Virus record (IMG/VR): IMGVR_UViG_3300035698_013060
Span: 1 to 64,000 of that record
Length of the DNA: 64,000 nt
Strand: one strand, 5' to 3'
The first letter of the stretch is position 1. Each line of letters begins with the position of its first letter. The notes under the pieces are model-generated. The model was not told the DNA's origin and searched no databases. It saw only the letters and a program-made list of their open reading frames with translations. Made by a program: the position numbers and the translations under genes. This document shows, one piece after another, positions 6,048 through 52,719 of this stretch.

Positions 6048-7715
6048 TTACGGAGTGGGCCAGCTGACGGCGCCGGTGTTGTTCTTGATCTCAATGCGGA
6101 AAATCGCATCGTTGAAGTACTCAGTCAGATGCCGCTTCGCGATCATGATGCTCGGGACCAAGCTGTACTGGGGATCCGAGTAACCCTTCTCGACGTTGAA
6201 GCTGTAGGGGAAGTACTTGTAGGTCATCTGCTCGTCCTGGGACGAGACAAAGATCACGTACAGGTAGCCCTGAGGCATCGCCGGGGTAGACACGATCTCG
6301 TAGCGATTTGCACCGCTGATAGCGCCGAGGCTGTAGTCTGCTTCCACACCCGAGCGTTCGCCAGCGGAACCAACAAAGGTCCAGGTGACATTCGGGAGCA
6401 GGTTGCAGTCCAGATCATTGCCGATGATCACGAACTTGCCGCCCGTGAACATACGATCCTGCTTGAGCTTCGTGGCGTAATGGTCGATCACGTCCTTCAG
6501 CATTTCGCGCCAGGCCTTCGGCGTACCGGAGAACTGTGCGTAGGGCTTCAGGTCGAATTCGGCCGGATAACGCTGGTCGCGGGCATAGCCCTCGACGATG
6601 AAGTCGCGCAGCTCGTGGTCGAGCTTCAGTGCCAGGGTGTTGGTCATGATATCGACGACCTTCGCGGCACCGTCGATATTGTACATGGCCATCACGTCTT
6701 GCAGGAACTCGATGGGAAGCGGGGCGTTCAAGTGTGTGCCGGTTCCGATCGTCAGGTCGCGAGTCTGAATGTCAAACGAGATACTCTCGGTATGCATGTT
6801 GAATTCAGAGCTGAGCTTACCCTTGATCTTCACTCCCAAGACGAAACCGCCGGTGGTCGCCAGCGTCAACGTCCCTGTCACACGATCCACACGGCCGAAC
6901 AGGTTGTCGGTCGTAGGAACTGCACCAGTCAAGGGGTTGCCGTCGACATCCAGGTCACTGGGATGGTACGCAGAGACGGCGTAGAAAACATCACCGTTCA
7001 GGCCACAACCGATACGTAGCTGTTCCACATCCACTGGTGCATCAGCATCACCGCCGAGGCTATGAGTGGTGGTGATCCGAACTGCGATCACATGGAAATC
7101 CGGATCAACACTGTCACCGACTGCCGCAGAGGCAACTGCCGCACCGGGAAGAGTCCCCAACAGGTCGAAGCCCTTGGTGGCACCGTCTACAATACCAGCA
7201 CCGTAATCGGTGTCGGCCAAGAACAGCCAATCATTCCAGAGAGACTGGCCTTCGACCAGACCTTCTGCACTGCCGCCGTCCATGATGGCTTCGGGCAGGT
7301 AATGGCGAACGCCATTCTTGATGATGTACGGAAGCAGGTAGCTGACCGAGAACTTCGGCAGCTTCACAACTTCGGTCGGAATGGCGTTCTTCATCGCCAT
7401 CCGGGGCCAAAGCTTCCTGATCGTCGGAACGCTCAGGCTGCTGATCGGGGTAACGCCGCTGAGGCTCTCTTGGAGAGTCGTCATCCGGCTGTTGTCAATG
7501 AGTTGCGCCAAGGAGTCCTGCTCATCGGCATCGACGCCCTTAAGCATCGCGGCCTTGTAGTCCTCGAACAGCCCGTTGTCGCTCAAGATCTCCTGGTAAC
7601 CTTCACCCAGGATATTGACGTGCTGTTCATCGAACAGGGCTTTTGCCTCATTCAGGACTTGGCTGTAGCCATCCTGTTTGGGCGCACCGAGATTGGTGGT
7701 CTTGTATGAAATCAT
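6048..7715 (-). CDS. Major capsid protein (HK97 fold, gp23-like) precursor
   Basis: 555 aa; highly biased codon usage; SLSVPTIRKLWP, LQDVMAMYNIDG...LALKLDHEL (gp23-like), LNE/LQE candidate cleavage sites; late promoter and strong terminator. Confidence 0.88.
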   Translation of the reverse strand: MISYKTTNLGAPKQDGYSQVLNEAKALFDEQHVNILGEGYQEILSDNGLFEDYKAAMLKGVDADEQDSLAQLIDNSRMTTLQESLSGVTPISSLSVPTIRKLWPRMAMKNAIPTEVVKLPKFSVSYLLPYIIKNGVRHYLPEAIMDGGSAEGLVEGQSLWNDWLFLADTDYGAGIVDGATKGFDLLGTLPGAAVASAAVGDSVDPDFHVIAVRITTTHSLGGDADAPVDVEQLRIGCGLNGDVFYAVSAYHPSDLDVDGNPLTGAVPTTDNLFGRVDRVTGTLTLATTGGFVLGVKIKGKLSSEFNMHTESISFDIQTRDLTIGTGTHLNAPLPIEFLQDVMAMYNIDGAAKVVDIMTNTLALKLDHELRDFIVEGYARDQRYPAEFDLKPYAQFSGTPKAWREMLKDVIDHYATKLKQDRMFTGGKFVIIGNDLDCNLLPNVTWTFVGSAGERSGVEADYSLGAISGANRYEIVSTPAMPQGYLYVIFVSSQDEQMTYKYFPYSFNVEKGYSDPQYSLVPSIMIAKRHLTEYFNDAIFRIEIKNNTGAVSWPTP

Positions 7716-7920: not shown

Positions 7921-8541
7921 CTACTCAGCGGGCTTCCTGCTAACCCGTTCGAGGACATCAGCAATAATCTTCACCTGTTCTTTGATAGCGATGAAGGAAA
8001 GAAGAAGGTTCTTGTATTCTGCCTTCGCAAACTTCTTGGTGAGTAGAATCCCGATCTTTTCTTGGATATCGAATGAGTGATCCTTCAGGACGGTCAAGAC
8101 CTCCTTGACGGTCAAGTCGGATGTAGTAGATGTCACTCTGAGAATGGAATCCAGAAGCTCTTCAGCCATCCCATTGAGGCCTTCGTACTCAGAGAAGAGC
8201 TTTTTTCGCTTCTCTACCTCAGCCTCGTCAAACTCTGGCTCTTCCATAGCGGGATCTTCTTCGCCGCCGCCGCCAAAGTCGCCTCCAGCATCATCATCAT
8301 CATCACCAGCACCTGCTCCAGCAGCATCATCATCGCCAGCACCTGCTCCATCCCCTAGATCATCTCCCCCGGTATCCCCTGCACCAGTGTCTTCCTTCTT
8401 TTCTTTCTTCTTTTCAGCGCCTCCAGCGTCCTCCCCTTCAGCTTTACCGGCAGGATCGTCTTCAGGTTTACCTACAGCTGTATCGTCTTTGTCCTCAGGA
8501 GCCTCATTAAGGAGGCTTTTATTCTTATAAAAAATGGCCAT
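7921..8541 (-). CDS. Acidic low-complexity head/scaffold-like protein
   Basis: D/E/G-rich N half, helical C half, directly upstream of the capsid gene; MAIFY...LLNE N-terminus. Confidence 0.6.
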   Translation of the reverse strand: MAIFYKNKSLLNEAPEDKDDTAVGKPEDDPAGKAEGEDAGGAEKKKEKKEDTGAGDTGGDDLGDGAGAGDDDAAGAGAGDDDDDAGGDFGGGGEEDPAMEEPEFDEAEVEKRKKLFSEYEGLNGMAEELLDSILRVTSTTSDLTVKEVLTVLKDHSFDIQEKIGILLTKKFAKAEYKNLLLSFIAIKEQVKIIADVLERVSRKPAE

Positions 8542-10454: not shown

Positions 10455-11279
10455 ATGAGTGAAAGAACAGTTGCTTATCTGATCACAGAGGGTAGGGGTC
10501 CTGAGACTCAGCCGAAAATCCTCCGTTCTGGAAACCCGAATGTCTGCCGGTTTAAGGTGGACACGCTCCAAGAGGGTGGTATCATCAATAGGAATAAACG
10601 GCGTTACCGCTGGGATCTCCTGGTTGATGCATGTAATCATCCTTACGTTCAGGAACGCTTGAGCACGGGAACCTTTTACTGCGAGTCCGGGCACCCGCGC
10701 GAGAAGACCGTGGCGAGGCAACTCAGGATTGAACAGGATCGGGTTTCCTGCATCATTAAAGAAATCGCTCTGAACAAACCCAGGGTCGGAGGTCCGATTG
10801 TCGAGACTGCCTCCACCCGTCGTGGTAAGGACCTGATGGGTTTGATCAGAGACAACGGTTGTAAAGTGGCGTTCTCCATGAGAGGCCTTGGTAAGGTCCA
10901 AGAATCTTCAGGTATTATTGATGTCGTTCCACCTCTACGTATCGTGTGCTGGGATGAGGTTGTTCACCCATCCGTCCCGAACGCCTACATGGGTGAGATC
11001 CTCACCGACGACGTGTTTGAGCCTGGAAAGGTTGATGAAGAATCTCTGATCATCCTGGCCGAAGACGACTTCGCCAGATACGTTCTGGACGCTTCTCCTG
11101 ACGCTAAGAATGCTTTGGATGCTTTGGAAGTTGATCCTCATGCATCTGGTAACAAGATCATCGTCAACGAGGACGGTACGCTCTCGATACAGCAGGAAAG
11201 CGAAACAGTCATCTGTCTTACAGAGACATTCGTCCGTCGTGAGATCGCCAATTACTTCTCAAACAGAACCGACGCTTAA
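10455..11279 (+). CDS. Prohead core protease (T4 gp21-like)
   Basis: INRNKRRY, ESGHP (catalytic His), AFSMRGLG (catalytic Ser), WDEVVHPSVPNA. Confidence 0.92.
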   Translation: MSERTVAYLITEGRGPETQPKILRSGNPNVCRFKVDTLQEGGIINRNKRRYRWDLLVDACNHPYVQERLSTGTFYCESGHPREKTVARQLRIEQDRVSCIIKEIALNKPRVGGPIVETASTRRGKDLMGLIRDNGCKVAFSMRGLGKVQESSGIIDVVPPLRIVCWDEVVHPSVPNAYMGEILTDDVFEPGKVDEESLIILAEDDFARYVLDASPDAKNALDALEVDPHASGNKIIVNEDGTLSIQQESETVICLTETFVRREIANYFSNRTDA

Positions 11280-14695: not shown

Positions 14696-15016
14696 TCACG
14701 TTCTCCCTTCGGTGAACACTTCTCTGGCTCGGAGCGCATCCGGTGCTGACAAGTTGCTCGGTCGGTTTTTCTGTTCTTCTGTATCAGACATCATCTTTTC
14801 GTAAATCTCATCAAGGGTCTTGTGTTTAGAGTAACTTCTGAAGAAAGCTTTTACAGTCTTATCAGAGATCCCATGGATTCTTGATAAGGACTTAACTTTG
14901 TCTTTGAAGCTTTGGCCTGGTCCAATCTTTATCCCGAATACATTCCTTATGAACGCCACTACGCTTATGTCTCTGCGGAGTGAGTTAATCGGGCTTTTGA
15001 CCCTTATATCAGTCAT
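14696..15016 (-). CDS. Hypothetical basic protein
   Basis: ORF translationally coupled within the minus-strand operon. Confidence 0.7.
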   Translation of the reverse strand: MTDIRVKSPINSLRRDISVVAFIRNVFGIKIGPGQSFKDKVKSLSRIHGISDKTVKAFFRSYSKHKTLDEIYEKMMSDTEEQKNRPSNLSAPDALRAREVFTEGRT

Positions 15017-15801
15017 CTTACATTTCCAAATTTCCCAGTCCTAAGAAATCTGTCGACCACTGTCCTGGATCTAGGATGACTGATGAGTTGATTATGAGTC
15101 ATTTCCAAAGTAGCTGTGTCTACTACCCCATGTGCAGTAGGAAGGCCATGAGCCGACCTAACTGTAACTGATCCATCGTTCGGACCCTTAAGGCCTTTGA
15201 TTCTGAAATCAAGTTCTTTCTGAGATCTTGTCAACAACTCACTTACATTCGAGTAAGGTTGACTTCCAGCCACAAGACCGATCTTGAACTTACTTTTAGG
15301 TTTATCACTCATCACAGCTTTGAGGATTTCGTCCATATACTTGATGATGAAAGTTTTACTCAATGTCGGACGGATGTCTTCTATTCTTTGGAACAACGGA
15401 CTCCCCTTGAATGGAGTACCAAGAGAGACAACCTTTCCAGGATTCTTAAACCTCCACCTAGAAAGAATATCAAAGACAATGAGTCCACCGAGAGAATGTC
15501 CGATGAAATGGACCTTTTTGTAATCTCTACCGAAGTTTACTTTCTCCAACTGTTCACCGGCTTCACCCATAAGTCCTTCCCAGGAGGTAAATACCGTTGA
15601 GAGATCCATTCTGAAAACTGACCAACCGAAATCTTGTTGGAGACCAACACCCATAACCTTAGTGACATTAGCACTCCCAATCCAACCGTGGACGACGAAG
15701 ACGATTTCATCTTTATGCTCTTTACCCCCTACAACCTTAGGGGTGTAAAAAAGCATTGTCATTGGATCCCTCTCATTGAGGAATAATTTCTTGTCACTCA
15801 T
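15013..15801 (-). CDS. Alpha/beta hydrolase (lipase/esterase)
   Basis: VVHGW oxyanion, GHSLGG nucleophile elbow, LGTPFKGS, NDGSV, catalytic His (THNQL); start moved to MSDKKLFLNE. Confidence 0.9.
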   Translation of the reverse strand: MSDKKLFLNERDPMTMLFYTPKVVGGKEHKDEIVFVVHGWIGSANVTKVMGVGLQQDFGWSVFRMDLSTVFTSWEGLMGEAGEQLEKVNFGRDYKKVHFIGHSLGGLIVFDILSRWRFKNPGKVVSLGTPFKGSPLFQRIEDIRPTLSKTFIIKYMDEILKAVMSDKPKSKFKIGLVAGSQPYSNVSELLTRSQKELDFRIKGLKGPNDGSVTVRSAHGLPTAHGVVDTATLEMTHNQLISHPRSRTVVDRFLRTGKFGNVR

Positions 15802-16015
15802 CGTCCTTTTTTCCTTTGCCTGTCGGCCCGGACTTCTTCCCGGACTTCTTAGCTTCTTCCTTAGAACGCCAGGAGTCGTCAACTCGCCCGAAGAATTCCT
15901 TCTTGTCGGCTTCGCTCATGCCAGCCACCGGATCTCCTTCAAGATTGCCCGCCTTGTCCTTGAGCATCGACTTGAAGTGCTTTTGGTATTTGGTTTCCTC
16001 AGTGAATATCGACAT
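15794..16015 (-). CDS. Small charged protein, putative internal head protein
   Basis: MSIFTEE start with AGGAG RBS; late promoter at 16061-16072. Confidence 0.7.
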   Translation of the reverse strand: MSIFTEETKYQKHFKSMLKDKAGNLEGDPVAGMSEADKKEFFGRVDDSWRSKEEAKKSGKKSGPTGKGKKDDE

Positions 16016-37048: not shown

Positions 37049-37639
37049 ATGTTATTTTACGAGCAAGTAGATATAGATTCAAAGAGACAAGGACGGTCTG
37101 CCTACGAAGAAGTCGATGATCTCCTAGACGATTGGAGAGATATGACTCGAGAGGCTAACTCGTATTGCGGAAGCAAAGTTTTGAAGATAATCGACCCTAG
37201 CGGTAAATACAAAGGGCCGTTCAATGGAACTGAGTCTGATCGACTGAAAGCTGTAGAACTTGTAACGTCAACTCTTTCCAAGGTGAAGAAGGTCGTTCCG
37301 AAGATGAAGAAGGCTCTTCGTCCAATGATTCAGAAGTTGGAAAAGGGTATCGAGTCAGGAGAGTTTCCAGACGAACGAGAATTTCTGATCTTTAAGTCCA
37401 AAGGGGAAGAGCAACGAATTCGAGCTGATCAACTTCTGGCTAGAATGAAGGCCTTTATGAAGGTTTCCGACTCAGAAATCTCGTTGGTTCTTTCCGATGT
37501 GACAATTATGTGGCAACAATTTGGAGATCTTAAAGCTAAAACAGAAGGTCTTCCTAAGAAAGCATCTGAAAAGAATAGTTTAACAGTCATGAATCTTTTC
37601 GGTTCTCAATCCTTGAGTAGTCAACATTTCCGGAATTAA
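37049..37639 (+). CDS. MLFY-family putative head protein
   Basis: Start moved to MLFYEQ (GGAGGAG RBS upstream; avoids overlap with the previous gene). Confidence 0.7.
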   Translation: MLFYEQVDIDSKRQGRSAYEEVDDLLDDWRDMTREANSYCGSKVLKIIDPSGKYKGPFNGTESDRLKAVELVTSTLSKVKKVVPKMKKALRPMIQKLEKGIESGEFPDEREFLIFKSKGEEQRIRADQLLARMKAFMKVSDSEISLVLSDVTIMWQQFGDLKAKTEGLPKKASEKNSLTVMNLFGSQSLSSQHFRN

Positions 37640-37645
37640 GCAATC

Positions 37646-37796
37646 ATGCTGTTTTATGAGAAAGCAGAGGTCATTGGATTCCACTCCATGACATGGCCTC
37701 AAAGTTCGGATGCAAGGAAGTAAGAAGAATGCCTGGGCTCTTTTGGGGACGAAGTTCACGAAACTCACCTTGAAGCAGGTCAAAAACAGCTTCTAA
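37646..37796 (+). pseudogene. Remnant of an MLFY-family gene
   Basis: MLFYEKAEVIGFHS... stops at 37723; another frame continues HGLKVRMQG...KNSF to 37796. Confidence 0.4.
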
Positions 37797-37816
37797 TATT
37801 CATAGGAGATTGAGAG

Positions 37817-38989
37817 ATGCCATTCGCAGGAGTTACAGACGCCATGGAGCGTCACCCAAATCTAAGCAAGTACTCTCCTAAAGCCCGCAAAGCGTGGTTC
37901 AAGGTGTGGAATGAGTGTGAGATCAGAGAGCTCAAGAAAGAAGGCAACTCTGATAAGAACCGGAAGAATTGGGAGGGGAAGTGCTTCGCCACAGCCTACA
38001 AGGTTGCCAACCGAGTTGATGGAAAGAAGTCCATCGATGAGGGGACCATCTTCAAAGGAACGATCCAAGAAGCCATTATGGCTAACGTGATCTCGAAGTC
38101 GGTTCTCGACGAGGCTATGGGTAATGTCACTTCTGATGACTCTTCACTCGCTGTTCATAGACTCAAAAATTTTCATGAAGATTTAGCTTTCCTGAAAGAC
38201 GAGCTTGAGAGGGGTAGATCCATCTATGTGGCTCGCGATGGAGTGGATCAGGGTAAGTTCAAGATCGGTGACCTCGTCGGGGTACCGTTCTGGCACAGAG
38301 CCCTAGAGGTCACTTCTGTAGAAGAACATGCGAGTGAAGAAGAGCTCCTACCTGACGCTGGCGAAGGTCCAGAAGGTCATACATCGGACGAGAAAGGTAA
38401 TACGGTGGACATGTTCGATGTTCTGGAGCTCTCTGACATGCATCAAGTAAGAGAAAACCGCTCTCTTATGTTCCTCAAGGAAGTTGACGTCGAGGGAGCC
38501 TTAAAGGGTATCGCTAAGAAAGTCGGCTTTGGTGTCGAGGAGCACAAGGAAGGACAGAATCCTGAGAAGTTCATTGCTGAACAGAGCGCCTTCTTGAAGG
38601 AGATCAAACATCTCCTTTCCCTTGGAGAAAAAGCCAAGGACATGTCTGATCCTGAAGATGAGGTCGTCCTGAAATGGCAGGGATTGATCTACGACGTCGT
38701 CAAGACCCAGGACAGCGACCGGGAAGAAGACAAAGAGATCGCTGGCAAACGTCTCAACTTCATGAAGAGCAAAGATGCCAAGTACGTTGGCAGAGGTATT
38801 GGAAGATTCGACGGGTGGTTGATCTTTGTCAGTTCGAATGGACGAGTGTTTTCTCCTGACAGAAAAGGTATCAGAGTTCTGTGGGATCTGAAGAAGGCGA
38901 AGAACACTATCTTCTGGGTAGAGAAGAATATTCAGGAAGCCAGAGACGCTTTGAAAAAAGGGAAGAAAGAAGAAGGGTCGAAAGAGTAA
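37817..38989 (+). CDS. Protein with N-terminal ChaB-like domain, probable head protein
   Basis: LSKYSPKARKAWFKVWN...CFATAYKVA resembles ChaB; several IxE/LxE sites follow. Confidence 0.65.
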   Translation: MPFAGVTDAMERHPNLSKYSPKARKAWFKVWNECEIRELKKEGNSDKNRKNWEGKCFATAYKVANRVDGKKSIDEGTIFKGTIQEAIMANVISKSVLDEAMGNVTSDDSSLAVHRLKNFHEDLAFLKDELERGRSIYVARDGVDQGKFKIGDLVGVPFWHRALEVTSVEEHASEEELLPDAGEGPEGHTSDEKGNTVDMFDVLELSDMHQVRENRSLMFLKEVDVEGALKGIAKKVGFGVEEHKEGQNPEKFIAEQSAFLKEIKHLLSLGEKAKDMSDPEDEVVLKWQGLIYDVVKTQDSDREEDKEIAGKRLNFMKSKDAKYVGRGIGRFDGWLIFVSSNGRVFSPDRKGIRVLWDLKKAKNTIFWVEKNIQEARDALKKGKKEEGSKE

Positions 38990-39117: not shown

Positions 39118-39194
39118 ACCCTGGTAGCTCAGCTGGATAGAGCAACGGCCTTCTAAGCCGTAGGTCCCGCGTTCGAGTCGCGGCCGGGGTGCCA
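39118..39194 (+). tRNA. tRNA-Arg(TCT)
   Basis: Full cloverleaf: ACCCTGG/CCGGGGT, anticodon loop CTTCTAA, TTCGAGT T-loop, encoded CCA. Confidence 0.97.
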
Positions 39195-41382: not shown

Positions 41383-41458
<76 letters not shown>

Positions 41459-42133: not shown

Positions 42134-42559
42134 TCAGGTCTTGTTAGCGCCTGCGCCCTTGGGCAGATCAGACGACTTCTTGTTACCCTCCGAACCGGAA
42201 AGGATTTCACGAGCGGCGGAAGTGGCCTTACTCCGGTACTTGGTCTCGATTTTCTTCCGGAAATTCTCAGCCATCGCCCGGTGCTTCTTCCACTGGACCC
42301 AGTTGGCATCCTTGTTGCGAGAAGCCATTTCCATGGCAGTCCTCTGCACCAACCGACCAATCTTTTGCTTCTTTGTGATCTTGACGCGCTTGATCTCCGT
42401 AGAGAAGCTAGCACGCTTCCGTTCGGTCAGGATCTGTTCGTCAGAGATCTCTTTGCCAGATTCATCCAAAAGGCCAAGGTCTTGTGCCTCCTCGACGATA
42501 ATGGCGATAAGGGCGTCTTCCTGAACTTGCTCTTCTGCTTCGTTTCCAAAAATGCTCAT
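42134..42559 (-). CDS. Putative internal head protein (acidic propeptide + basic domain), paralog B
   Basis: MSIF start, LDE/LTE sites, basic C-half similar to 42623-43099. Confidence 0.75.
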   Translation of the reverse strand: MSIFGNEAEEQVQEDALIAIIVEEAQDLGLLDESGKEISDEQILTERKRASFSTEIKRVKITKKQKIGRLVQRTAMEMASRNKDANWVQWKKHRAMAENFRKKIETKYRSKATSAAREILSGSEGNKKSSDLPKGAGANKT

Positions 42560-42622: not shown

Positions 42623-43099
42623 TTACTTCTTCTCTGAGGCTGCTTTCTTCTTCTTCTTGCCGCCGCCAGAGATGGTCTGTTGAACCGTCTGACGCGCTTT
42701 GGATTTGTACTTCTTCTCAATCTGCTCACGGAGCTTGAGCTCCATCTTACGAGCTTTCTCGTAACGCTTGTACAGACCGCCGCCCTCAGCTTTGGCCAAC
42801 TTCATCGTGGCCTGTTGACGCATGAGCGACAACTTCTGTTTCCGCGTCTTCACGACAATCTTGCGACTCATCTTCGGCGCAGCTTCCGACAAGAGTTCGT
42901 CAAAGAAGCTCTTGTCTTCTTCGGTGAGACTCTCAGTACTGTCGTCGTCAATGAAGAGTACGGATTCGTTGATTTCGACCAGTGATTCACTGATCTCTTC
43001 AGCATCCATCTCGAGAGCGTCGAAGAGCTCGTCCATCTCATTCACGAGATCCTCGCTCAGCTGAACCTTTTCTTCCGGACCCGTGTTCAAGAACAACAT
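42623..43099 (-). CDS. Putative internal head protein, paralog A
   Basis: MLFL start, many (L/I)xE sites, basic C-half; late promoters at 43142-43153 and 43173-43184. Confidence 0.75.
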   Translation of the reverse strand: MLFLNTGPEEKVQLSEDLVNEMDELFDALEMDAEEISESLVEINESVLFIDDDSTESLTEEDKSFFDELLSEAAPKMSRKIVVKTRKQKLSLMRQQATMKLAKAEGGGLYKRYEKARKMELKLREQIEKKYKSKARQTVQQTISGGGKKKKKAASEKK

Positions 43100-47012: not shown

Positions 47013-48563
47013 ATGAAGACGGACATATTCCAAATAGACACGTTCGTGGAGGTCAACAGCCTGAAGGCCGTTACCAACCCGATCTACCTCAATCCCGACA
47101 GGACACCCACGTCCAACGGGATCTTTTCGTTTGAGATCTTCGGTACTCCGGGGACTAGGGATAGGAAAGAAAGGTTCGGGTATATCGACCTCAATGCACA
47201 CGTCATACACCCGTTCCTGTACAAACATCTCGTTCAGATGGACCGGAAAATCCGGGCCGTGGCCGAAGGGATGAACTTGTTCAAGGTTGATAAGGCTGGA
47301 GATCTTGCCAAAGCAGAAGAAGGTGATAAGGATGCTGGTACAGGATTGGAGTGGCTATACTCTGTCTTTAAGACCATCAAGTGGAAGCCTTCCGGGACTA
47401 AGTCTCGTGATACGAAGATCTCAATGTTTCGCCAACTGAAGGTGGATGAGATCTTCGTGACCAAGTGGCCGATAATTCCATGTCACTACAGAGATCTGAA
47501 CTTTGCCAAATTAGATACCGGACGTATCGGTATTGGTGAAGTGAATGAGTTCTATGTTAGGGTCCTTGGAGCATCTGAAGCAGTCAAGAGGAACCCTCCT
47601 GGTCTTGGTTTGGTTGGTCACTCAGCGTCGTACAGGATGCAGACTGTCTTAGTTGAGCTCTATGATCATCTGATGTCCCGTATGACCTTTGGTAAGCGGG
47701 GCTACATTCGTCGGTTCCTTATGGGTAAGAACCTAGACTATACGGCTCGGGTAGTCATCACAACCAGTAAGATGTCCGAGGCTGATAGGTACACTGATAC
47801 TGAAGTGCCTCTTTCTCACATGGGCGTTCCTTTGCACATCTGCTGTGTTGCCTTTCAACCATTCGTGGTAAAGGCAGTACAGGAGATGCTTGGGTCCATC
47901 CTAGCTGGAAAGAGGCGTATCATCATGGGGCAGAAGTCTGTCGAGGGTATAGATCTTCTCTCCGAGAATATCTCGGATGATGGAGTCGAACAGATGATCT
48001 CCATGTTCGCCAGATCCCAGGAAGAGCGGTTCAGTCCGATCCTCTTGGAAGATGCTGAAGGGAACAAGACGGAACTCAAGTTGTTTGAACAGTTTCTGGG
48101 CCGTAGCTTTACGGTGTGCGATCTTCTTTTTCTTGCCTGCCGAGAGGCTATCAAAGGCAAGTACATGTACATCACTCGTTATCCAGTAACGTCACATCAG
48201 TCAACCAACGTTGTCAAACCAGTCATTGTCACTACCGAGAAAACTACTACGATCGACTTCACCCCAGGTGGAACTGCCGAAGGACGTAGATCTATTCTTG
48301 GAAAGATTGACAATTACCCGGATATCAATTACGGTCACCTGTGGCGTGAAGCTGCAGTGATGGACAATACTATGACTGGAATCACTGGCGCAGACTTCGA
48401 CGGAGATCAAATGAGTCTCGTCGGGATGTTCACCCAGGAAGCCAACGCTGAAGCTGAAAAGATCATGAAGAGTAAGATGAGTCTCGTGACGGCTGACGGA
48501 CGTCCGTCCAGAAACGTTAGTAATGAGGCTGTGCTTTCGTTGTACATGATGACAAAGGATTGA
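47013..48563 (+). CDS. RNA polymerase beta-prime N-terminal/catalytic fragment
   Basis: GIFSFEIFG, RFGYIDL, IIPCHYRD, GKRGYIRRFLMGKNLDYTARVVI, TRYP, catalytic GADFDGD; start moved to MKTDIF. Confidence 0.95.
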   Translation: MKTDIFQIDTFVEVNSLKAVTNPIYLNPDRTPTSNGIFSFEIFGTPGTRDRKERFGYIDLNAHVIHPFLYKHLVQMDRKIRAVAEGMNLFKVDKAGDLAKAEEGDKDAGTGLEWLYSVFKTIKWKPSGTKSRDTKISMFRQLKVDEIFVTKWPIIPCHYRDLNFAKLDTGRIGIGEVNEFYVRVLGASEAVKRNPPGLGLVGHSASYRMQTVLVELYDHLMSRMTFGKRGYIRRFLMGKNLDYTARVVITTSKMSEADRYTDTEVPLSHMGVPLHICCVAFQPFVVKAVQEMLGSILAGKRRIIMGQKSVEGIDLLSENISDDGVEQMISMFARSQEERFSPILLEDAEGNKTELKLFEQFLGRSFTVCDLLFLACREAIKGKYMYITRYPVTSHQSTNVVKPVIVTTEKTTTIDFTPGGTAEGRRSILGKIDNYPDINYGHLWREAAVMDNTMTGITGADFDGDQMSLVGMFTQEANAEAEKIMKSKMSLVTADGRPSRNVSNEAVLSLYMMTKD

Positions 48564-48566
48564 GAT

Positions 48567-49733
48567 ATGTTATTTTACAGCGAAGTTAATAGTATTCCAA
48601 CGAACTGGGAACCTATTGATGAAATGGCTTTCCCTTTCTTTGGGACTATGGACCTGTACCATGGATCCAGATACGAGATCAATGGAGGTTTCCTTGACGC
48701 TCAAATGTGGGTCAGTAGTAATAATCTAGAGGAAAACTCTGGGTTGGGAGTATTCTTTTAGGATAACAAGGCTTCTGCTGCTAACTGGGCTCTAGAAACA
48801 TACGCTAACTGGGTATTTGACGAGTACAGGAAGTCTAAGACTAAGAAGGTTCTTACGTTCAAGAAAGTACGATACGCCGGAGGGTATATACTTCCTATTT
48901 TCGCTACGAGACCTAACGCTAGTGAACTTTTGATCATGGACGACAATGATTCAGCTTGGGATGGATTCTATTCTGAGAACGAGGATAGCTCGAAGTTCTT
49001 AGATAAAGACGGCAATAGGAATCTGATGGGGGGATTTGTAGATTGGTTGTGGACACATAAGAAACACAATAACAAACTTTGGATCTTCAAAGCTACTGAG
49101 AATAGGAGTAATATCACTCACGGTCATAGCCTAGATTACTCTGAATACACTGTTGTTCAGGACAAAGTGAAGATACAGTCTAAGAAGAGTATAAGTCCTA
49201 GTGACTTGAAAAGACCGAGAGTAGTTAGTGGTGGTGAATTCTACCATTATTTCCAAAGCGAACGTATATTCGGTAGAATATTCCTCAGTCCGAAAAAGTC
49301 GATACATAATCTCAACACTTCTAGGATAATCGCTGGAGAGGCGAAGGTGGTGGGGACCAAAAATGTGATGCGTGTTGATGATCCGAGAAGAATAGCTCAC
49401 ATCAAAATGAGGAACTACATATTCTCCGATGGAATTGGACTGACGTTTAAGGAAGCTTCTGGAGGATATAGTCCAAAAAGTGATGTGAAGGAAGGCTACA
49501 GAGATGTAGTTTTGAAGGGTGGAATTGACAGAACAGCTCTCGTAGCTGCTGTTAAAGCTGCTCTTAACACTGAGCTTGTGAACGAAGAAATCATAGTTTT
49601 AGTATACGTCCCATCTGATTCCCAGATAATAAAATGGGGTAGAATCAGGATTATGAGCTTCCAGAAGAAAAAGAAGGGTGGAGTCTTTCTTGTGATTACC
49701 AACCCTAAAAAGTTTTACTGTTTGGGGAAGTAA
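48567..49733 (+). pseudogene. MLFY-family protein with ADP-ribosyltransferase-like N-terminal motifs, interrupted by one in-frame TAG (48759-48761)
   Basis: ORFs 48567-48761 and 48930-49733 are one frame with no other stop; LYHGS...GLGVFF*DNKASAANWA. Confidence 0.65.
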
Positions 49734-49735
49734 TC

Positions 49736-50365
49736 ATGCTTTTCTACAACAAAGACATCATTACTGAAGTAGTACACGGAAGTTTAAAGCTTCCGGTATC
49801 TACTCCGGAAGAGCTCTTAGAGTGGATGGACAGACTCGAATACGGGTGGATCGGTAAAGATGGAACAGAGCATTCTTCACCAAAAGGCGACAGTGACATC
49901 TTCGAGAAATGGTGGGACGAGTATGCTCTTCTACTTCCAAAGGACGTCGCTAAGAAAAAGATAGGGACGTGCTACGAGCAGACTATTTTTGCGGCTCACG
50001 TCTTCAAAACCCAGTTCGAGATACAACACAAACTTGTTCATATTCAGCAGTACCTTACCAGCAATCATGCTTTCCTAGTCTTTAAAAGAGACAGGAAGTG
50101 GTACCACTTCGAGCATTCCTTCGCCATGTTCAGAGGGATACATGGTCCATTCAACTCAGTGAAAGAGATCGCTGAGAGGGTCTACGTGATGATGAACTCT
50201 CATACCCAGGGAGGCCATGGATTTGAATGGCATTACATGGATCCGAAGAAGTTTAAGAAGAAGATGTCAGCTCGAGAATTCTATAGAGAAGTGAAATACA
50301 ACTGGAAATACTCCGAAGGGGATACCTCTAAGGAACCTCTTGAAACTGAACCCAAGGAGACATGA
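49736..50365 (+). CDS. MLFY-family transglutaminase/papain-like protein
   Basis: GTCYEQ (Cys), NHAFLVF (His), WYHFE (acid) triad. Confidence 0.75.
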   Translation: MLFYNKDIITEVVHGSLKLPVSTPEELLEWMDRLEYGWIGKDGTEHSSPKGDSDIFEKWWDEYALLLPKDVAKKKIGTCYEQTIFAAHVFKTQFEIQHKLVHIQQYLTSNHAFLVFKRDRKWYHFEHSFAMFRGIHGPFNSVKEIAERVYVMMNSHTQGGHGFEWHYMDPKKFKKKMSAREFYREVKYNWKYSEGDTSKEPLETEPKET

Positions 50366-51408
50366 ATATGATCGTTGGAATTGAAGAAAAAGTAAAAGAA
50401 GCCTCCGAGATGGATGCCATGCTCGAGGCTGCCCTGGAATTCCTTGACAAGGTTGCTGTCGTCGAGGGAACCAGTGAGCTCATGATGATGGAAGAGAGCA
50501 AGGAGCTCTTGGAAGCAATGGGTTTTGACGAGGGCGATATTACTCTCACTGAGGACTCTGAGTTCTACGAGGAGCTACTTGACGAGGGATTCAAATCATC
50601 CTTTGGAAAGTACTTCGGTAGGATGATTGGCAAGGGATCTGCTAAGGGAACAGAAGTAGCCGTTCCAGATACAGGGGGTTTCGCTGTAGAAAGAGCTGCA
50701 TCGAAAGCTGCTGGAGAACAAGCTAAAGCTCCGAAGAAGTCAATAGCTAACAGATTGATCGATTACGCAATGAAACCTATGCGTAAGGCTGTAGGAGAAG
50801 GAGCTAAAGATGCGGGGGATCAGGCTGCTGAAGGAGCTAAAGAGAATATCAAGGAATGGAAGAAGGAAATAGAAACCAAGGTACAGGACGCCAAGTCCGA
50901 AGCCTTGAGAAAAGCCTACTTCCTCGGAGGAGCCTCCCTTGTCGGTACTGCTGCGTCTTCAGCGATCCTTTATGACAAGAACAAGCTGATCGAAGATTCC
51001 AAGAGCTTCGTCAAACAAGTGCAGTTTCTCAGGAACTCAGCCACTGGTAATAGCGGAGAACTAAAGATTCAAGAGACCAGTATTCGCAAGAAAATAGGTC
51101 TCTTCATTCGGTTCTTCATCGAAGGCCTTGTGATAGCGATTTCATCAGCCCTGCTCGGAGGAGCGTTCGCCCTTATTTCGTTCCCTCTTGCCGTCGCTGT
51201 TGCTGTCTTAGTCCCGATCATCGCATCGATGCTTACCACAATGAAGAGAGGTGAAGCCGTCTCTGTCATGGTAAACAACGAGATCAAGGATTTTGACAGA
51301 TTCATGAAGTCAACGTCCGGAAAGCAACTTTCCAGAATCCAAAAGAAGTCACTGACAAAGTCCAGAGACAACTTGATGGAACTACAAAGAAGGCTGGTGA
51401 CAGGATGA
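50362..51408 (+). CDS. Putative ejected/head protein with acidic propeptide and hydrophobic helices
   Basis: Acidic N-terminal ~75 aa ending LTE/LDE; C-terminal hydrophobic hairpin. Confidence 0.7.
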   Translation: MNMIVGIEEKVKEASEMDAMLEAALEFLDKVAVVEGTSELMMMEESKELLEAMGFDEGDITLTEDSEFYEELLDEGFKSSFGKYFGRMIGKGSAKGTEVAVPDTGGFAVERAASKAAGEQAKAPKKSIANRLIDYAMKPMRKAVGEGAKDAGDQAAEGAKENIKEWKKEIETKVQDAKSEALRKAYFLGGASLVGTAASSAILYDKNKLIEDSKSFVKQVQFLRNSATGNSGELKIQETSIRKKIGLFIRFFIEGLVIAISSALLGGAFALISFPLAVAVAVLVPIIASMLTTMKRGEAVSVMVNNEIKDFDRFMKSTSGKQLSRIQKKSLTKSRDNLMELQRRLVTG

Positions 51409-51770
51409 TTTTTTATGACAAAACGGATACAAGTAAAACTACCATTGGTGGGTCCGATGATCTTGTCGAGATCTTCGCTGAAATGACTTTCCATGAAGCG
51501 AAAGATGTCGAGCTTCTCAATGAGATTCCTAAGCCGACGCTTGGAGAAGGTGAGTGGGCTGTCGCTAAAAGGGTGAAGATCAAACACCGCAAGCGCAATC
51601 CTCGTACCGGCCGGATGAAGAAATTCAAGCAGCTTCAGTGGATTAAGACCAAGATCTCTCCGGAACAGCGGACCTTCAGGAATATGCCTAGATACGCTGA
51701 CAAGAAAGTCCATGGTTCATTTCTCAGACTGGTTGGGATTGACGAAGGGTGGCGGCAAGGCTGTGAGTAA
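51405..51770 (+). CDS. MIFY-family protein (possibly 5' part of a frameshifted gene)
   Basis: MIFYDK start, LNE site, basic domain; overlaps the next ORF by 59 nt. Confidence 0.65.
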   Translation: MIFYDKTDTSKTTIGGSDDLVEIFAEMTFHEAKDVELLNEIPKPTLGEGEWAVAKRVKIKHRKRNPRTGRMKKFKQLQWIKTKISPEQRTFRNMPRYADKKVHGSFLRLVGIDEGWRQGCE

Positions 51771-52251
51771 TTACAGAACTGTTGACGCTGTTACTGGGAA
51801 ACTTATCAAAGAACCCGGAAGAATCAGTGTGGCGTCATATGAAAAGATATCTCAAAAACAGGGAATGATTTTCAAACCGTCGTCAATAATAGCAATCGAT
51901 CCAGGTGGAGAGTTTACTGCTGCTATCTGGTTGGAGTCTATCTATAGGTATATGGCTTTCTCAGCTTTCAATATGAAAGGAGAGAGTCTCGTTGACAAAA
52001 TGGCCAAACGGTTGAAGAAATCTCTTATGGTCAACAAGTATTGGGGTAAGCTCTCCGAGCTGATAGATCATCTCGAATACTACAAATCTTTGGAGCCGGA
52101 CGAAGAGTGGATTGCTGTACTCAGGGCCTTGAAAAGCAAAAATCATTTCGTGAAAGCAGCATTGGCTGATCTAGAATCGAAAGATGAAGTGAAGTTTGAC
52201 AAGAGTCTTATCAGGGCCTTGAAAAAGGAATCCTCAAGTAGGAAGAATTGA
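51712..52251 (+). CDS. Hypothetical protein (possibly 3' part of the gene starting at 51405)
   Basis: No clear RBS; +1 frame relative to the upstream ORF. Confidence 0.55.
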   Translation: MVHFSDWLGLTKGGGKAVSNYRTVDAVTGKLIKEPGRISVASYEKISQKQGMIFKPSSIIAIDPGGEFTAAIWLESIYRYMAFSAFNMKGESLVDKMAKRLKKSLMVNKYWGKLSELIDHLEYYKSLEPDEEWIAVLRALKSKNHFVKAALADLESKDEVKFDKSLIRALKKESSSRKN

Positions 52252-52350
52252 CGTAAAGAAAGAAAGTACTTGGTGCTGTCACCGGACATCTTATCCATGA
52301 ACAACTCATTGCTCTGAATTCGAACTAAACAAACTGGAGAGGTAAGAGAA

Positions 52351-52719
52351 ATGCTGTTTTACGCAAAAGAACAAGAAGATGGAGAGCTCCTGGACGAGAT
52401 GTTCGGCGGCATTGGCTCTTGGCTCAAGCGCAATTGGCTCGGTAAGGATGAAGACCTCCTTACCGACATCAAAGACAAGATGAAGTCTGAGATCAAGACT
52501 CAGGAAGACAAGGACGAAGCTCTCGAGGATCTTGATGAGATCATCGATGCGACTCCGTCCTCCGGTAAGATCAGTTGGGGAGACGTTGCTTCCTTCTTGA
52601 TGACCAGTGGATGGATCTACCTCGTTATACGCATTATCCATGGACAGTCCAAGACGTCCAAGGATTTTCGGAAGAATCTCATGGACCTGCGGAGCAAGAT
52701 CAAGGCCATGAAGGTCTAG
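52351..52719 (+). CDS. MLFY-family putative head protein
   Basis: MLFYAKEQEDGELLDE; own late promoter at 52300-52311. Confidence 0.8.
   Translation: MLFYAKEQEDGELLDEMFGGIGSWLKRNWLGKDEDLLTDIKDKMKSEIKTQEDKDEALEDLDEIIDATPSSGKISWGDVASFLMTSGWIYLVIRIIHGQSKTSKDFRKNLMDLRSKIKAMKV

What the first reader, a model, noticed from the sequence alone, without database searches (positions are those of the whole stretch)
48567..52719. Shared N-terminal M-(L/I)-F-Y peptide on unrelated proteins: candidate capsid-targeting signal for a set of injected effectors
Seen in sequence: otherwise dissimilar ORFs begin MLFYSE (48567), MLFYNKDIITE (49736), MIFYDK (51405), MLFYAKEQEDGELLDE (52351), MLFYEQ (37049), MLFYEKAE (37646), MAIFYKNKSLLNE (8541, -), MLFLNTGPEE (43099, -), MSIFGNE (42559, -), MSIFTEE (16015, -) and MSDKKLFLNE...MLFY (15801, -). 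Most are followed by (L/I)-x-E sites. Established: T4 internal proteins use a ~10-aa N-terminal capsid-targeting sequence removed by gp21 after (L/I)-x-E, and this window encodes a gp21-like protease. Inference: this is a different, modular packaging tag. Its cargo includes an ART-like protein, a Cys-His-Glu enzyme and a lipase, i.e. enzymes that could be delivered into the host with the DNA. The tag could be useful for loading foreign proteins into capsids.
Basis: partly seen in the sequence, partly recalled or inferred. Interest (0 to 1): 0.85.

Follow-up and report, generated by a model that had tools for sequence, protein, structure and literature searches.

The report
N-terminal MLFY tag on phage proteins
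About twenty otherwise unrelated proteins of an uncultivated 241-kb salt-lake jumbo phage begin with the same four residues (Met-Leu/Ile-Phe-Tyr), most likely a variant of phage T4's capsid-targeting propeptide, so it flags which proteins the phage probably packs into its head.

Summary
M-[LI]-F-Y opens 15 genes of the 241-kb genome where 0.05 are expected. The Leu, Phe and Tyr codons vary synonymously, so selection acts on the peptide. The motif is not enriched inside proteins. Tagged proteins are mutually unrelated apart from two paralogue pairs. They are acid-rich after the tag and enriched for (L/I)-x-E sites.

The phage is an AR9/PBS1-like jumbo phage with a T4-type head: a Gp23-family capsid protein, a portal and a gp21-family protease.

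The link to the head comes from comparison:
- The putative scaffold gene beside the capsid gene carries the tag (MAIFY here, MLFY in a relative).
- Three tagged families have AR9 homologues annotated as virion proteins.
- Relatives carry sister tags at the same N-termini: MFLSE/MFLNE, M-x-S-I-F-L-N-E, and MKNLFLLE/MSSFFN in AR9.
- A transglutaminase-like enzyme carries the tag as a 16-20-residue add-on that its homologues lack.

I read it as a lineage-specific variant of the T4 capsid-targeting sequence, in which aromatic residues target and L/I-x-E directs cleavage. Packaging, cleavage and injection are untested.

- The "ART-like" label is unsupported, and that gene has an in-frame TAG.
- The ORF at 37646 has only 25 codons.

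The parts
48567..48761 (+). Tagged ORF, MLFYSEVNSIPTNWEPIDE...; 64 codons ending at an in-frame TAG (48759-48761). First piece of a 388-codon frame.
48762..49733 (+). Continuation of the same frame after the TAG (323 codons).
49736..50365 (+). Tagged protein, MLFYNKDIITE|VVHG..., 209 aa. Transglutaminase-like (papain-fold Cys-His) domain. Sequence homology to P0003 starts at residue 21 and most structural matches start at residues 16-22, so the tag is a 16-20-residue add-on.
50368..51408 (+). Untagged neighbour, 346 aa. Acidic N-terminal region with several L-x-E sites and a hydrophobic C-terminal segment. Same gene cluster.
51405..51770 (+). Tagged ORF, MIFYDKTDTSKTTIGGSDDLVE|..., 121 aa. Overlaps the next ORF (51712-52251), which is in another frame.
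52351..52719 (+). Tagged protein, MLFYAKEQEDGELLDE|MFGG..., 122 aa. Acidic, with a weakly hydrophobic C-terminal segment.
37049..37639 (+). Tagged protein, MLFYEQVDIDSK..., 196 aa, no family match.
37646..37723 (+). MLFYEKAE... ORF of only 25 codons, followed by two in-frame stops before gene 37817-38989. Possibly a decayed tag.
42623..43099 (-). Loose tag, MLFLNTGPEE..., 158 aa. phrog_26909 'virion structural protein'. Homologue of AR9 g153 (virion protein, starts MSSFFNLLTE) and syntenic beside the DNA polymerase gene.
42134..42559 (-). Loose tag, MSIFGNE|AEE..., 141 aa. Paralogue of 42623-43099 (phrog_26909). The G001 homologue starts MMRGIFLQSE.
7921..8541 (-). Putative scaffold or core protein, MAIFYKNKSLLNE|APED..., 206 aa. 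Long acidic low-complexity region; immediately upstream of the capsid gene. Positional counterparts in relatives start MLFYND (L048), MFLSE (G001) and MNSIFLKN (L052).
15013..15801 (-). Alpha/beta-hydrolase (lipase/esterase-like, nucleophile elbow GHSLGG). MLFY is at 15756; an alternative start at 15801 adds MSDKKLFLNE. The fold begins about residue 14-18 after MLFY.
15794..16015 (-). Loose tag, MSIFTEE|TKY..., 73 aa, lysine-rich.
10455..11279 (+). Prohead (head maturation) protease of the gp21 family, the presumed processing enzyme. H80, S141 and D167 are invariant in 75 homologues.
6048..7715 (-). Major capsid protein (T4 Gp23 family, PF07068). N-terminus MISYKTT...QVLNE|AKALF; L21 and E23 are invariant in the alignment with a 66% relative and AR9.
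47013..48563 (+). Virion RNA polymerase beta'-N subunit (orthologue of AR9 g145). Untagged. The tagged cluster 48567-52719 starts 4 bases after its stop codon.

Best explanation
The M-(L/I)-F-Y N-terminus is a lineage-specific form of a capsid-targeting propeptide of the T4 type.

Proposed mechanism (inferred, not shown):
1. The hydrophobic, aromatic extreme N-terminus, with Phe3 and Tyr4 invariant, gives each carrier affinity for the assembling prohead core.
2. The carrier is built into the procapsid together with the scaffold, which carries the same tag.
3. The gp21-family prohead protease then cuts at a nearby (L/I)-x-E site, typically 6-25 residues from the N-terminus. This frees the mature protein inside the head, and the short acidic propeptide leaves.
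4. Because tag, linker and site together occupy only about 10-25 residues ahead of the folded domain, the module can be placed on any gene. The cargo set is therefore large and unrelated: about 20 proteins, or 7% of the genes. It includes the scaffold, virion-protein families shared with AR9, a lipase-like hydrolase, a transglutaminase-like cysteine enzyme, a zinc-ribbon peptide, a PrsW-like membrane protease and other proteins with transmembrane segments.
5. Some of these are probably ejected with the DNA.

Shown: the enrichment, the peptide-level selection, the modularity, the association with head genes, with virion-protein orthologues and with L/I-x-E sites, and the presence of the protease.

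Inferred: binding to the core, encapsidation, cleavage position and ejection.
For: 1. Enrichment and N-terminal specificity: 15 strict starts against 0.05 expected, with no internal enrichment.
2. Synonymous codon variation and non-conserved upstream DNA.
3. Tagged proteins are mutually unrelated except for two paralogue pairs.
4. Modularity.
- The transglutaminase-like protein aligns with untagged homologues only from residue 21, and most structural matches start at residues 16-22.
- The hydrolase domain starts at about residue 14-18.
5. Processing context.
- (L/I)-x-E in residues 5-30: 15 of 21 against 64 of 244 (p = 5e-5). The region is also acid-rich.
- A gp21-family protease is present, with invariant His, Ser and Asp. 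Relatives' orthologues hit Peptidase_S77.
- The capsid protein is Gp23 family, with an invariant L21-x-E23 near its N-terminus.
6. Link to the head.
- The acidic protein directly upstream of the capsid gene is tagged here (MAIFY...LLNE|A) and in a relative with 66% MCP identity (MLFYND...ILSE|G).
- In L052, six consecutive genes between the protease and the capsid gene start M-x-[SN]-[IL]-F-[LFI].
7. Virion orthologues.
- 42623-43099 and 42134-42559 correspond to AR9 g153 'virion protein'.
- 142224-143138 corresponds to AR9 g216 'virion protein'.
- Both families hit 'virion structural protein' PHROGs.
8. Tag conservation at orthologous N-termini despite 23-39% identity elsewhere.
- AR9 g216 starts MKNLFLLE, g153 MSSFFNLLTE and g215 MFFEK. 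The proteolysed virion-RNAP subunit g078 starts MSFFKG.
- In G001, MFLNE opens the g216-like protein, and MFLSE opens both the scaffold and the orthologue of the tagged TM protein 115605.
9. T4 precedent.
- In the 10-residue IPIII CTS, targeting depends mainly on residues 4 and 7 and processing on residues 8 and 10 (PMC9026906).
- The CTS is MKTYQEFIAE (PMC8442874), so the targeting residues are Tyr and Phe.
- T-even internal proteins are diverse and share only the CTS (PMC3012670).
Against: - There are no experimental data. The phage is known only from salt-lake metagenomes, so neither presence in virions nor cleavage is shown for any tagged protein.
- Six of 21 tagged proteins have no (L/I)-x-E in residues 5-30.
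- Only three tagged families have detectable AR9 homologues, so the virion-protein link rests on few cases.
- Some tagged genes lie in tail or baseplate neighbourhoods. 182121-182672 lies beside baseplate-wedge homologues, and 154945-156106 lies after the tape-measure region. The tag may therefore not be head-specific.
- Several carriers have 2-3 predicted transmembrane helices, which is awkward for soluble head cargo.
- The virion RNAP beta'-N subunit, a known packaged protein in AR9, is untagged.
- Structure co-prediction of the protease with a tagged 30-mer gave no answer, neither for nor against.
Confidence: 0.6

Rival explanations
1. Processing signal only. The hydrophobic N-terminus is an extended recognition element (P-side residues or an exosite) for the prohead protease, or simply a conserved short propeptide. 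Incorporation into the head is directed by other parts of each protein.
For: In relatives the tag is fused to the cleavage motif itself: MFLSE, MFLNE, SIFLNE, SLFLNE, LLLE. In this genome MLFLNE and KKLFLNE also occur. This looks like an F/L-phi-x-E site placed at the very N-terminus.
Against: In this genome MLFY is separated from the first L/I-x-E by a variable 2-30 residues, and position 6 is rarely E. In T4 the targeting and processing determinants of the CTS are separable, and a non-cleavable CTS still targets (PMC9026906). Unrelated enzymes such as the transglutaminase-like protein have no other obvious head-binding part.
Confidence: 0.15
2. General virion-assembly or ejection-apparatus tag, not head-specific. 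The motif would mark proteins recruited to another assembly, such as the tail, baseplate or membrane-associated assembly sites, or proteins handled by a phage chaperone.
For: Some tagged genes sit among tail or baseplate homologues. Several carriers have transmembrane helices or a PrsW-like domain. T4-type proheads assemble on the membrane (PMC9026906).
Against: The scaffold-position protein next to the capsid gene carries the tag in four lineages, and in L052 the tagged genes fill the protease-to-capsid interval. The enrichment of L/I-x-E sites points to the head protease.
Confidence: 0.12
3. A signal unrelated to virions: an N-terminal stability or degradation signal (N-degron-like), a translation-efficiency ramp, or a localisation signal within the infected cell.
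For: The first few residues are known to influence translation and stability (my own knowledge, not tested here). No direct evidence of packaging exists.
Against: The tag is not on the most highly expressed structural genes: sheath, portal and terminase are untagged. It co-occurs with acidic linkers and L/I-x-E sites. It tracks virion-protein orthologues and the scaffold. It lacks the 7-15-residue hydrophobic core of a secretion signal.
Confidence: 0.08
4. Inherited remnant. The carriers descend from one ancestral gene or share a 5' cassette spread by recombination, and the tetrapeptide has no present function.
For: Two pairs of carriers are paralogues.
Against: The other carriers belong to different folds: alpha/beta hydrolase, transglutaminase-like, PrsW-like and zinc ribbon. 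The flanking DNA is not conserved and the codons vary synonymously, which indicates purifying selection on the four residues. Sister tags are kept at orthologous N-termini across phages with only 37-46% capsid identity.
Confidence: 0.03

Closest known systems
[quoted passage not shown]
   Same: - A short N-terminal propeptide shared by otherwise diverse proteins.
- Aromatic residues near the N-terminus act as targeting determinants (T4 Tyr4 and Phe7; here Phe3 and Tyr4).
- A separate L/I-x-E processing site follows.
- The phage has a Gp23-family capsid protein, a portal (phrog_213/phrog_3004; a 48%-MCP relative's portal hits Portal_T4) and a gp21-family protease.
- The cargo includes enzymes.

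   Different: - No sequence similarity to MKTYQEFIAE.
- The tag is a fixed tetrapeptide at residues 1-4, with a variable spacer before the cleavage motif.
- About 20 carriers scattered over the genome, instead of a handful in T4.
- The scaffold-position protein itself carries the tag.
- Several carriers have transmembrane segments.
- Nothing has been tested experimentally.
N-terminal propeptides of ejection and inner-body proteins of phiKZ-like giant phages (phiKZ gp175, SPN3US gp245 protease substrates)
   Same: Giant phages with multisubunit virion RNA polymerase and many head-internal proteins whose N-terminal propeptides are removed by a gp21-like protease. Propeptides are proposed to target proteins into the prohead, for example SPN3US gp47 (PMC7411985).
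   Different: - Those propeptides are long (for example 111 residues in gp47), and the papers I read describe no shared short tag.
- From my own knowledge, their cleavage motif is S/A/G-x-E or A-x-E. Here [SAG]-x-E is not significantly enriched (p = 0.06), whereas [LI]-x-E is.
Virion proteins of Bacillus phage AR9/PBS1 (g153, g215, g216, and the virion-RNAP subunit g078)
   Same: The closest characterised relatives: capsid 40%, virion RNAP beta' 34% identity. Their virion proteins start with related F-rich N-termini (MSSFFNLLTE, MFFEK, MKNLFLLE, MSFFKG). Two of them are homologues of tagged proteins here. g078 is annotated as proteolysed.
   Different: - AR9 has no MLFY enrichment: 9 pattern matches against 9 in the reversed control. 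It has no dominant N-terminal 4-mer.
- Its tags are looser and fewer.
Encapsulin cargo-loading peptides
   Same: Short, portable peptides that load unrelated cargo enzymes into an HK97-fold shell. A relative (L052) even has an EncFtn-like protein carrying the N-terminal tag.
   Different: From my own knowledge, encapsulin loading peptides are typically C-terminal, are not removed by a maturation protease, and bind the shell protein directly. The binding partner here is unknown.

Membership tests
T4-type capsid-targeting sequence (CTS) system | Short propeptide at the extreme N-terminus, shared by proteins that are otherwise unrelated | tested here: met
   15 strict and 6 loose carriers. Only two paralogue pairs remain after trimming 12 residues. 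The add-on is absent from homologues of the transglutaminase-like protein.
T4-type capsid-targeting sequence (CTS) system | Targeting determinants are hydrophobic or aromatic residues in the N-terminal part of the propeptide (T4 IPIII residues 4 and 7) | tested here: inconclusive
   Phe3 and Tyr4 are invariant in 19 of 19 tags, parallel to T4 Tyr4 and Phe7 (PMC9026906; PMC8442874). Their role in targeting cannot be tested in silico. Co-folding gave no answer.
T4-type capsid-targeting sequence (CTS) system | Propeptide ends at a gp21-type (L/I)-x-E cleavage site | tested here: met
   15 of 21 carriers against 64 of 244 other proteins have [LI]-x-E in residues 5-30 (p = 5e-5). Six carriers lack it. 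Actual cleavage is not shown.
T4-type capsid-targeting sequence (CTS) system | Phage encodes a gp21-family (Peptidase S77-like) prohead protease with catalytic His and Ser | tested here: met
   Window 10455-11279 hits phrog_207 and phrog_3014 'head maturation protease'. H80, S141 and D167 are invariant in 75 homologues. The direct PF03420 scan of this genome was negative, but orthologous proteases of relatives hit PF03420.
T4-type capsid-targeting sequence (CTS) system | T4-type head: Gp23-family capsid protein, portal, scaffold core | tested here: met
   MCP hits PF07068 Gp23 and phrog_20655. The portal hits phrog_3004 and phrog_213. The acidic scaffold-like protein lies beside the MCP gene.
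T4-type capsid-targeting sequence (CTS) system | Sequence similarity to the T4 CTS (MKTYQEFIAE) | tested here: not met
   The consensus M-[LI]-F-Y-[ENDQ]-x shares no alignable similarity with it. This is an analogous or highly diverged variant, not the T4 sequence.
T4-type capsid-targeting sequence (CTS) system | Carriers are physically inside the head, are processed, and are ejected | not testable with these tools
   The phage is uncultivated and known only from metagenomes. Indirect evidence only: AR9 homologues of three carrier families are annotated virion proteins.
phiKZ-like inner-body or ejection-protein propeptides | Processing at S/A/G-x-E, with long family-specific propeptides | tested here: inconclusive
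   [SAG]-x-E in residues 5-30: 11 of 21 against 80 of 244 (p = 0.06). The propeptides here are short and share a tag.
Sec/Tat-type signal peptide | N-terminal positively charged region followed by a hydrophobic core of 7-15 residues | tested here: not met
   Only four hydrophobic residues, followed by polar and acidic residues. No N-terminal transmembrane-like segment in any carrier.
   No Pfam hit at E <= 0.1 for either piece. No PHROG hit. The Atlas model has low confidence (pLDDT 0.33) and its nearest clusters are not ARTs.

The most novel reading that the evidence does not exclude
MLFY is an autonomous, minimal (4-5 residue) capsid-loading peptide recognised by a dedicated site in the procapsid rather than by the protease. 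It would define, from sequence alone, an unusually large packaged proteome of about 20 proteins, including membrane-inserting proteins and enzymes, in a halophilic AR9-like jumbo phage. The sister tags in related lineages (MFLSE, x-S-I-F-L-N-E, LLL-x-E, MLFY) would then be a co-evolving tag-receptor series. That would offer several mutually orthogonal tags for loading proteins into T4-type capsids.
Probability: 0.3. Interest if true: 0.7.

Novelty: new variant of a known kind. Interest (0 to 1): 0.55.

Why it matters
If the tag works as proposed, the packaged and possibly injected proteome of an uncultivated jumbo phage can be read directly from its genome. Here that is about 7% of its genes. 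The same approach should work for the whole AR9/PBS1/phiR1-37-like clade through the sister tags. It would also show that the T4 strategy extends to distant giant phages, on a much larger scale and including the scaffold itself. In that strategy, diverse cargo shares only a targeting propeptide. A four-residue tag separable from the cleavage site would be a compact tool for loading foreign proteins into capsids, but the T4 CTS already serves that purpose, so the practical novelty is modest.

Tried and rejected
1. RNA- or DNA-level signal: rejected. The codons vary synonymously and upstream DNA is not conserved. No extended upstream k-mer was found beyond Shine-Dalgarno-like words.
2. AR9-type late promoter (AACA-N6-T[AG], PMC5312081) as a marker of late expression: not informative. 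It was found upstream of 3 of 19 tagged and 32 of 254 other genes.
3. MLFY in relatives: no enrichment in AR9 or in the 239-kb relative G001. This led to the discovery of different sister tags instead.
4. Searches for close relatives with long contigs found only identical copies or short contigs.
   - Searches run: MCP, virion RNAP beta', portal and sheath in IMG/VR; RNAP beta' in the JGI metagenomes.
   - Two look-ups returned no DNA.
5. Homologue search for the 304-aa tagged virion protein: only itself was found.
6. Co-folding of the protease (75-row alignment) with the first 30 residues of the 49736 protein: 'no answer', score 0.00. This is not evidence either way.
7. ART-like assignment: no support.
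8. Stop-codon reassignment or a suppressor tRNA as the explanation for the in-frame TAG: the genome has only tRNA-Arg(TCT) and tRNA-Lys(CTT).
9. Population variants at the TAG or at the tags: none seen in four salt-lake runs. Only one contig, probably the source, spans the TAG.
10. Literature: no paper holds 'MLFY' in a phage-assembly context.

Full report
WHAT THE WINDOW IS

The window is the first 64 kb of a 241,176-bp IMG/VR virus record with direct terminal repeats and 48% GC. The same sequence, without a single difference, occurs on a 57-kb contig from another sample. It also occurs in several salt-lake metagenome runs.

It is a jumbo phage with multisubunit RNA polymerases. Its nearest characterised relatives are Bacillus phages AR9/PBS1, the Staphylococcus jumbo phages and Yersinia phiR1-37. 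Virion RNAP beta' is about 34% identical and the capsid protein 40% identical to AR9.

The head is of the T4 type:
- Capsid protein at 6048-7715(-): phrog_20655 and PF07068 Gp23.
- Portal at 25725-28160(-).
- Large terminase at 16967-19003.
- Prohead protease at 10455-11279(+): phrog_207 and phrog_3014. H80, S141 and D167 are invariant in an alignment of 75 homologues.

THE OBSERVATION

With my own gene calls (273 genes), MLFY is the commonest N-terminal tetrapeptide by a wide margin. After curation, 15 genes start with M-[LI]-F-Y where 0.05 are expected (Poisson 1e-32). Six more start with looser forms: MAIFY, MLFL twice, MTVFY and MSIF twice.

Several checks show this is a real peptide-level signal at true N-termini:
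- The tripeptide [LI]FY is not enriched inside proteins (17 observed, 12.6 expected).
- For 12 of the 15 strict starts the Met lies 1-11 codons after the upstream in-frame stop, and all tabulated starts follow a purine-rich stretch (GGAG/AGGA in most).
- Leu, Phe and Tyr are each encoded by several synonymous codons, and the upstream DNA is unrelated, so selection acts on the peptide.
- Position 5 is E, N, D or Q in 16 of 19 tags. Nothing further is conserved.
- With 12 residues trimmed, the carriers are mutually unrelated except for two paralogue pairs.

Corrections:
- The ORF at 37646 is only 25 codons long, followed by two stops before gene 37817-38989.
- 48567-49733 is one 388-codon frame interrupted by a single TAG at 48759-48761. 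The TAG is identical in the second assembly, and the genome has no suppressor tRNA. I describe this break and leave it as it is.
- 51405-51770 overlaps 51712-52251, which is in another frame.
They are at 3269 in the non-virion RNAP beta-N subunit and at 235429 in UvsX.

WHAT THE CARRIERS ARE

Most carriers have no family match. Those that can be identified are:
- 15013-15801(-): an alpha/beta hydrolase with a GHSLGG nucleophile elbow. The domain starts about 14-18 residues after MLFY.
- 49736-50365: a transglutaminase-like Cys-His enzyme (Atlas score 0.96, TM about 0.75). Two homologues from unrelated phage contigs lack the tag, and homology starts at residue 21. Most structural matches start at residues 16-22. 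The tag, spacer and ITE site therefore form a 16-20-residue add-on.
- A PrsW-like membrane protease.
- Two proteins with 2-3 predicted transmembrane helices.
- A 70-aa zinc-ribbon protein.

Compared with the other proteins, the carriers are more acidic after the tag: 0.23 against 0.15 (p = 6e-6). They more often have (L/I)-x-E within residues 5-30: 15 of 21 against 64 of 244 (p = 5e-5). [SAG]-x-E, the phiKZ-type motif, is not significantly enriched.

THE LINK TO THE HEAD

Four lines of evidence connect the tag to head assembly.

1. The scaffold position. The 206-aa protein directly upstream of the capsid gene has a long acidic low-complexity region typical of scaffold or core proteins. It starts MAIFYKNKSLLNE|A.
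   - In a relative with 66% capsid identity (L011/L048) the protein in that position starts MLFYND...ILSE|G.
   - Three more of the nine neighbouring genes there start MLFYDE, MIFYEE and MIFLNE. The last is an HD-domain protein.

2. Virion-protein orthologues.
   - The paralogues 42623-43099 and 42134-42559 hit phrog_26909 'virion structural protein'. They are homologous and syntenic to AR9 g153, annotated 'virion protein'.
   - 142224-143138 hits phrog_26049 and AR9 g216, also 'virion protein'.

3. Sister tags in other lineages. Orthologous N-termini keep a related hydrophobic, Phe-containing tag although the proteins are otherwise only 23-39% identical.
   - AR9: g216 starts MKNLFLLE, g153 MSSFFNLLTE, g215 MFFEK. 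The proteolysed virion-RNAP subunit g078 starts MSFFKG.
   - G001, a 239-kb relative with 37% capsid identity and 63% GC: MFLNE opens the g216-like protein. MFLSE opens both the scaffold and the orthologue of the tagged transmembrane protein 115605. MMRGIFLQSE opens the g153-like protein. F-phi-x-E is six-fold concentrated in the first eight residues of G001 proteins.
   - L052 (46% capsid identity): six consecutive genes between the protease and the capsid gene start M-x-[SN]-[IL]-F-[LFI], mostly followed by N/D/K-E. They include an EncFtn-like and a DUF5661 protein.
   - L053 and L056: MFLDDE...GLMFLSE|A, MRPLLLSINE and MRTLLLE.

4. The capsid protein. It has an invariant L21-x-E23 close to its N-terminus in this phage, the 66% relative and AR9.

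MLFY itself is restricted to this lineage. AR9 and G001 show no enrichment.

INTERPRETATION

The best explanation is a T4-type capsid-targeting propeptide in a lineage-specific form.

In T4, the diverse internal proteins share only a 10-residue CTS that directs them into the scaffolding core and is removed by gp21 (PMC3012670; PMC7411985). Within that CTS, targeting depends mainly on residues 4 and 7 and processing on residues 8 and 10 (PMC9026906). With the sequence MKTYQEFIAE (PMC8442874), the targeting residues are Tyr and Phe, and the processing residues are the I-x-E.

The present system has the same logic: invariant Phe3 and Tyr4 at the extreme N-terminus and a separate (L/I)-x-E a few residues on. 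In the relatives the two parts are fused (F-L-x-E at the N-terminus). This suggests that MLFY evolved from an N-terminal cleavage-site tag.

It differs from T4 in five ways:
- It has no sequence similarity to the T4 CTS.
- The spacer before the cleavage site is variable.
- There are about 20 carriers, or 7% of the genes.
- The scaffold-position protein carries the tag.
- Some carriers have transmembrane segments.

What is shown is statistical and comparative. Binding to the core, encapsidation, the cleavage position and ejection are all inferred. I put this explanation at about 0.6.

RIVALS

- Processing signal only, with no targeting role (0.15). The fused tags in relatives favour it. The variable spacer here and the separability shown in T4 count against it.
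- A general virion or ejection-apparatus tag, not specific to the head (0.12). Some carriers lie among tail or baseplate homologues and some have transmembrane helices.
- A signal unrelated to virions, such as stability or translation (0.08).
- A functionless inherited remnant (0.03). Different folds, synonymous codon variation and conservation across lineages all count against it.

An attempt to co-fold the protease with a tagged 30-mer returned 'no answer' and counts neither way.

NOVELTY AND VERDICT

I found no description of this tag, or of the sister tags of the AR9 clade, in the searchable literature. The AR9 genome paper and the phiR1-37 proteome paper could not be read.

The principle is known from T4, so this is a new variant of a known kind. 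Its value is that it predicts the packaged proteome of uncultivated jumbo phages from sequence alone and gives concrete, cheap experiments. 'ART-like', 'different from T4' and 'injected effectors' go beyond the evidence or are too narrow.

Noticed in passing
window 48567-49733 (TAG at 48759-48761): A 388-codon frame that starts with the MLFY tag is interrupted by one in-frame TAG after codon 64. It is identical in a second assembly from another sample. The genome has no suppressor tRNA. It could be a nonsense-mutated gene or a read-through gene. It was left as found.
   Followed up: partly
window 37646-37816: MLFYEKAE... opens a 25-codon ORF that is in frame with gene 37817-38989 but separated from it by two stops. 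The downstream gene has its own Shine-Dalgarno sequence. This looks like a decayed tag region.
   Followed up: partly
window 51405-52251: The tagged 121-aa ORF overlaps, by 59 bases and in another frame, a 179-aa ORF with a weak ribosome-binding site. This may be a frameshifted single gene. No slippery run was seen at the overlap.
   Followed up: partly
L052:2804-8594: In a relative with 46% capsid identity, six consecutive genes between the protease and the capsid gene start M-x-[SN]-[IL]-F-[LFI]. One is an EncFtn-like (encapsulated-ferritin-like) protein and one is DUF5661. The EncFtn-like protein would be a ferritin-like cargo apparently tagged for a phage head.
   Followed up: partly
L048:56-4217, L049:1865-3737, L050:1199-3069: Relatives with 62-66% capsid identity carry two-component-system genes close to the capsid gene. 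One is a 1162-aa PAS/HATPase/receiver protein. Others are a HATPase+PilZ kinase with a receiver protein.
   Followed up: no
contig of P0013 (no DNA returned): A relative with 61% capsid identity encodes an 879-aa protein with Vault_3 and MVP_shoulder (major vault protein) domains near the DNA ligase gene.
   Followed up: no
L009:15429 (genome 235429) and window 3269: M[LI]FY also occurs internally, at residue 86 of the UvsX-like recombinase and at residue 21 of the non-virion RNAP beta-N subunit. That is 3 internal occurrences against 0.36 expected. They are probably chance, but internal starts were not excluded.
   Followed up: partly
window 39118-39194 and 41383-41458: The only two tRNA genes of the genome: tRNA-Arg(TCT) and tRNA-Lys(CTT).
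   Followed up: no
L005:17539-L006:6208 (genome 157539-166208, - strand): A 2889-aa ORF at the position of the AR9 tape-measure protein (g204, 1925 aa). It is followed by an orthologue of an AR9 virion protein and two small MLFY/MIFY genes that flank a RusA-like gene.
   Followed up: partly
window 50484-50522: A 39-base stretch is shared, with 5 differences, with an unrelated, more abundant contig in four salt-lake runs. This is a short shared segment of unknown meaning.
   Followed up: no
whole genome: The AR9 late-promoter consensus AACA-N6-T[AG] is not enriched upstream of genes here, and no long AT-rich early-promoter word was found. The promoters of this phage remain unidentified.
   Followed up: partly
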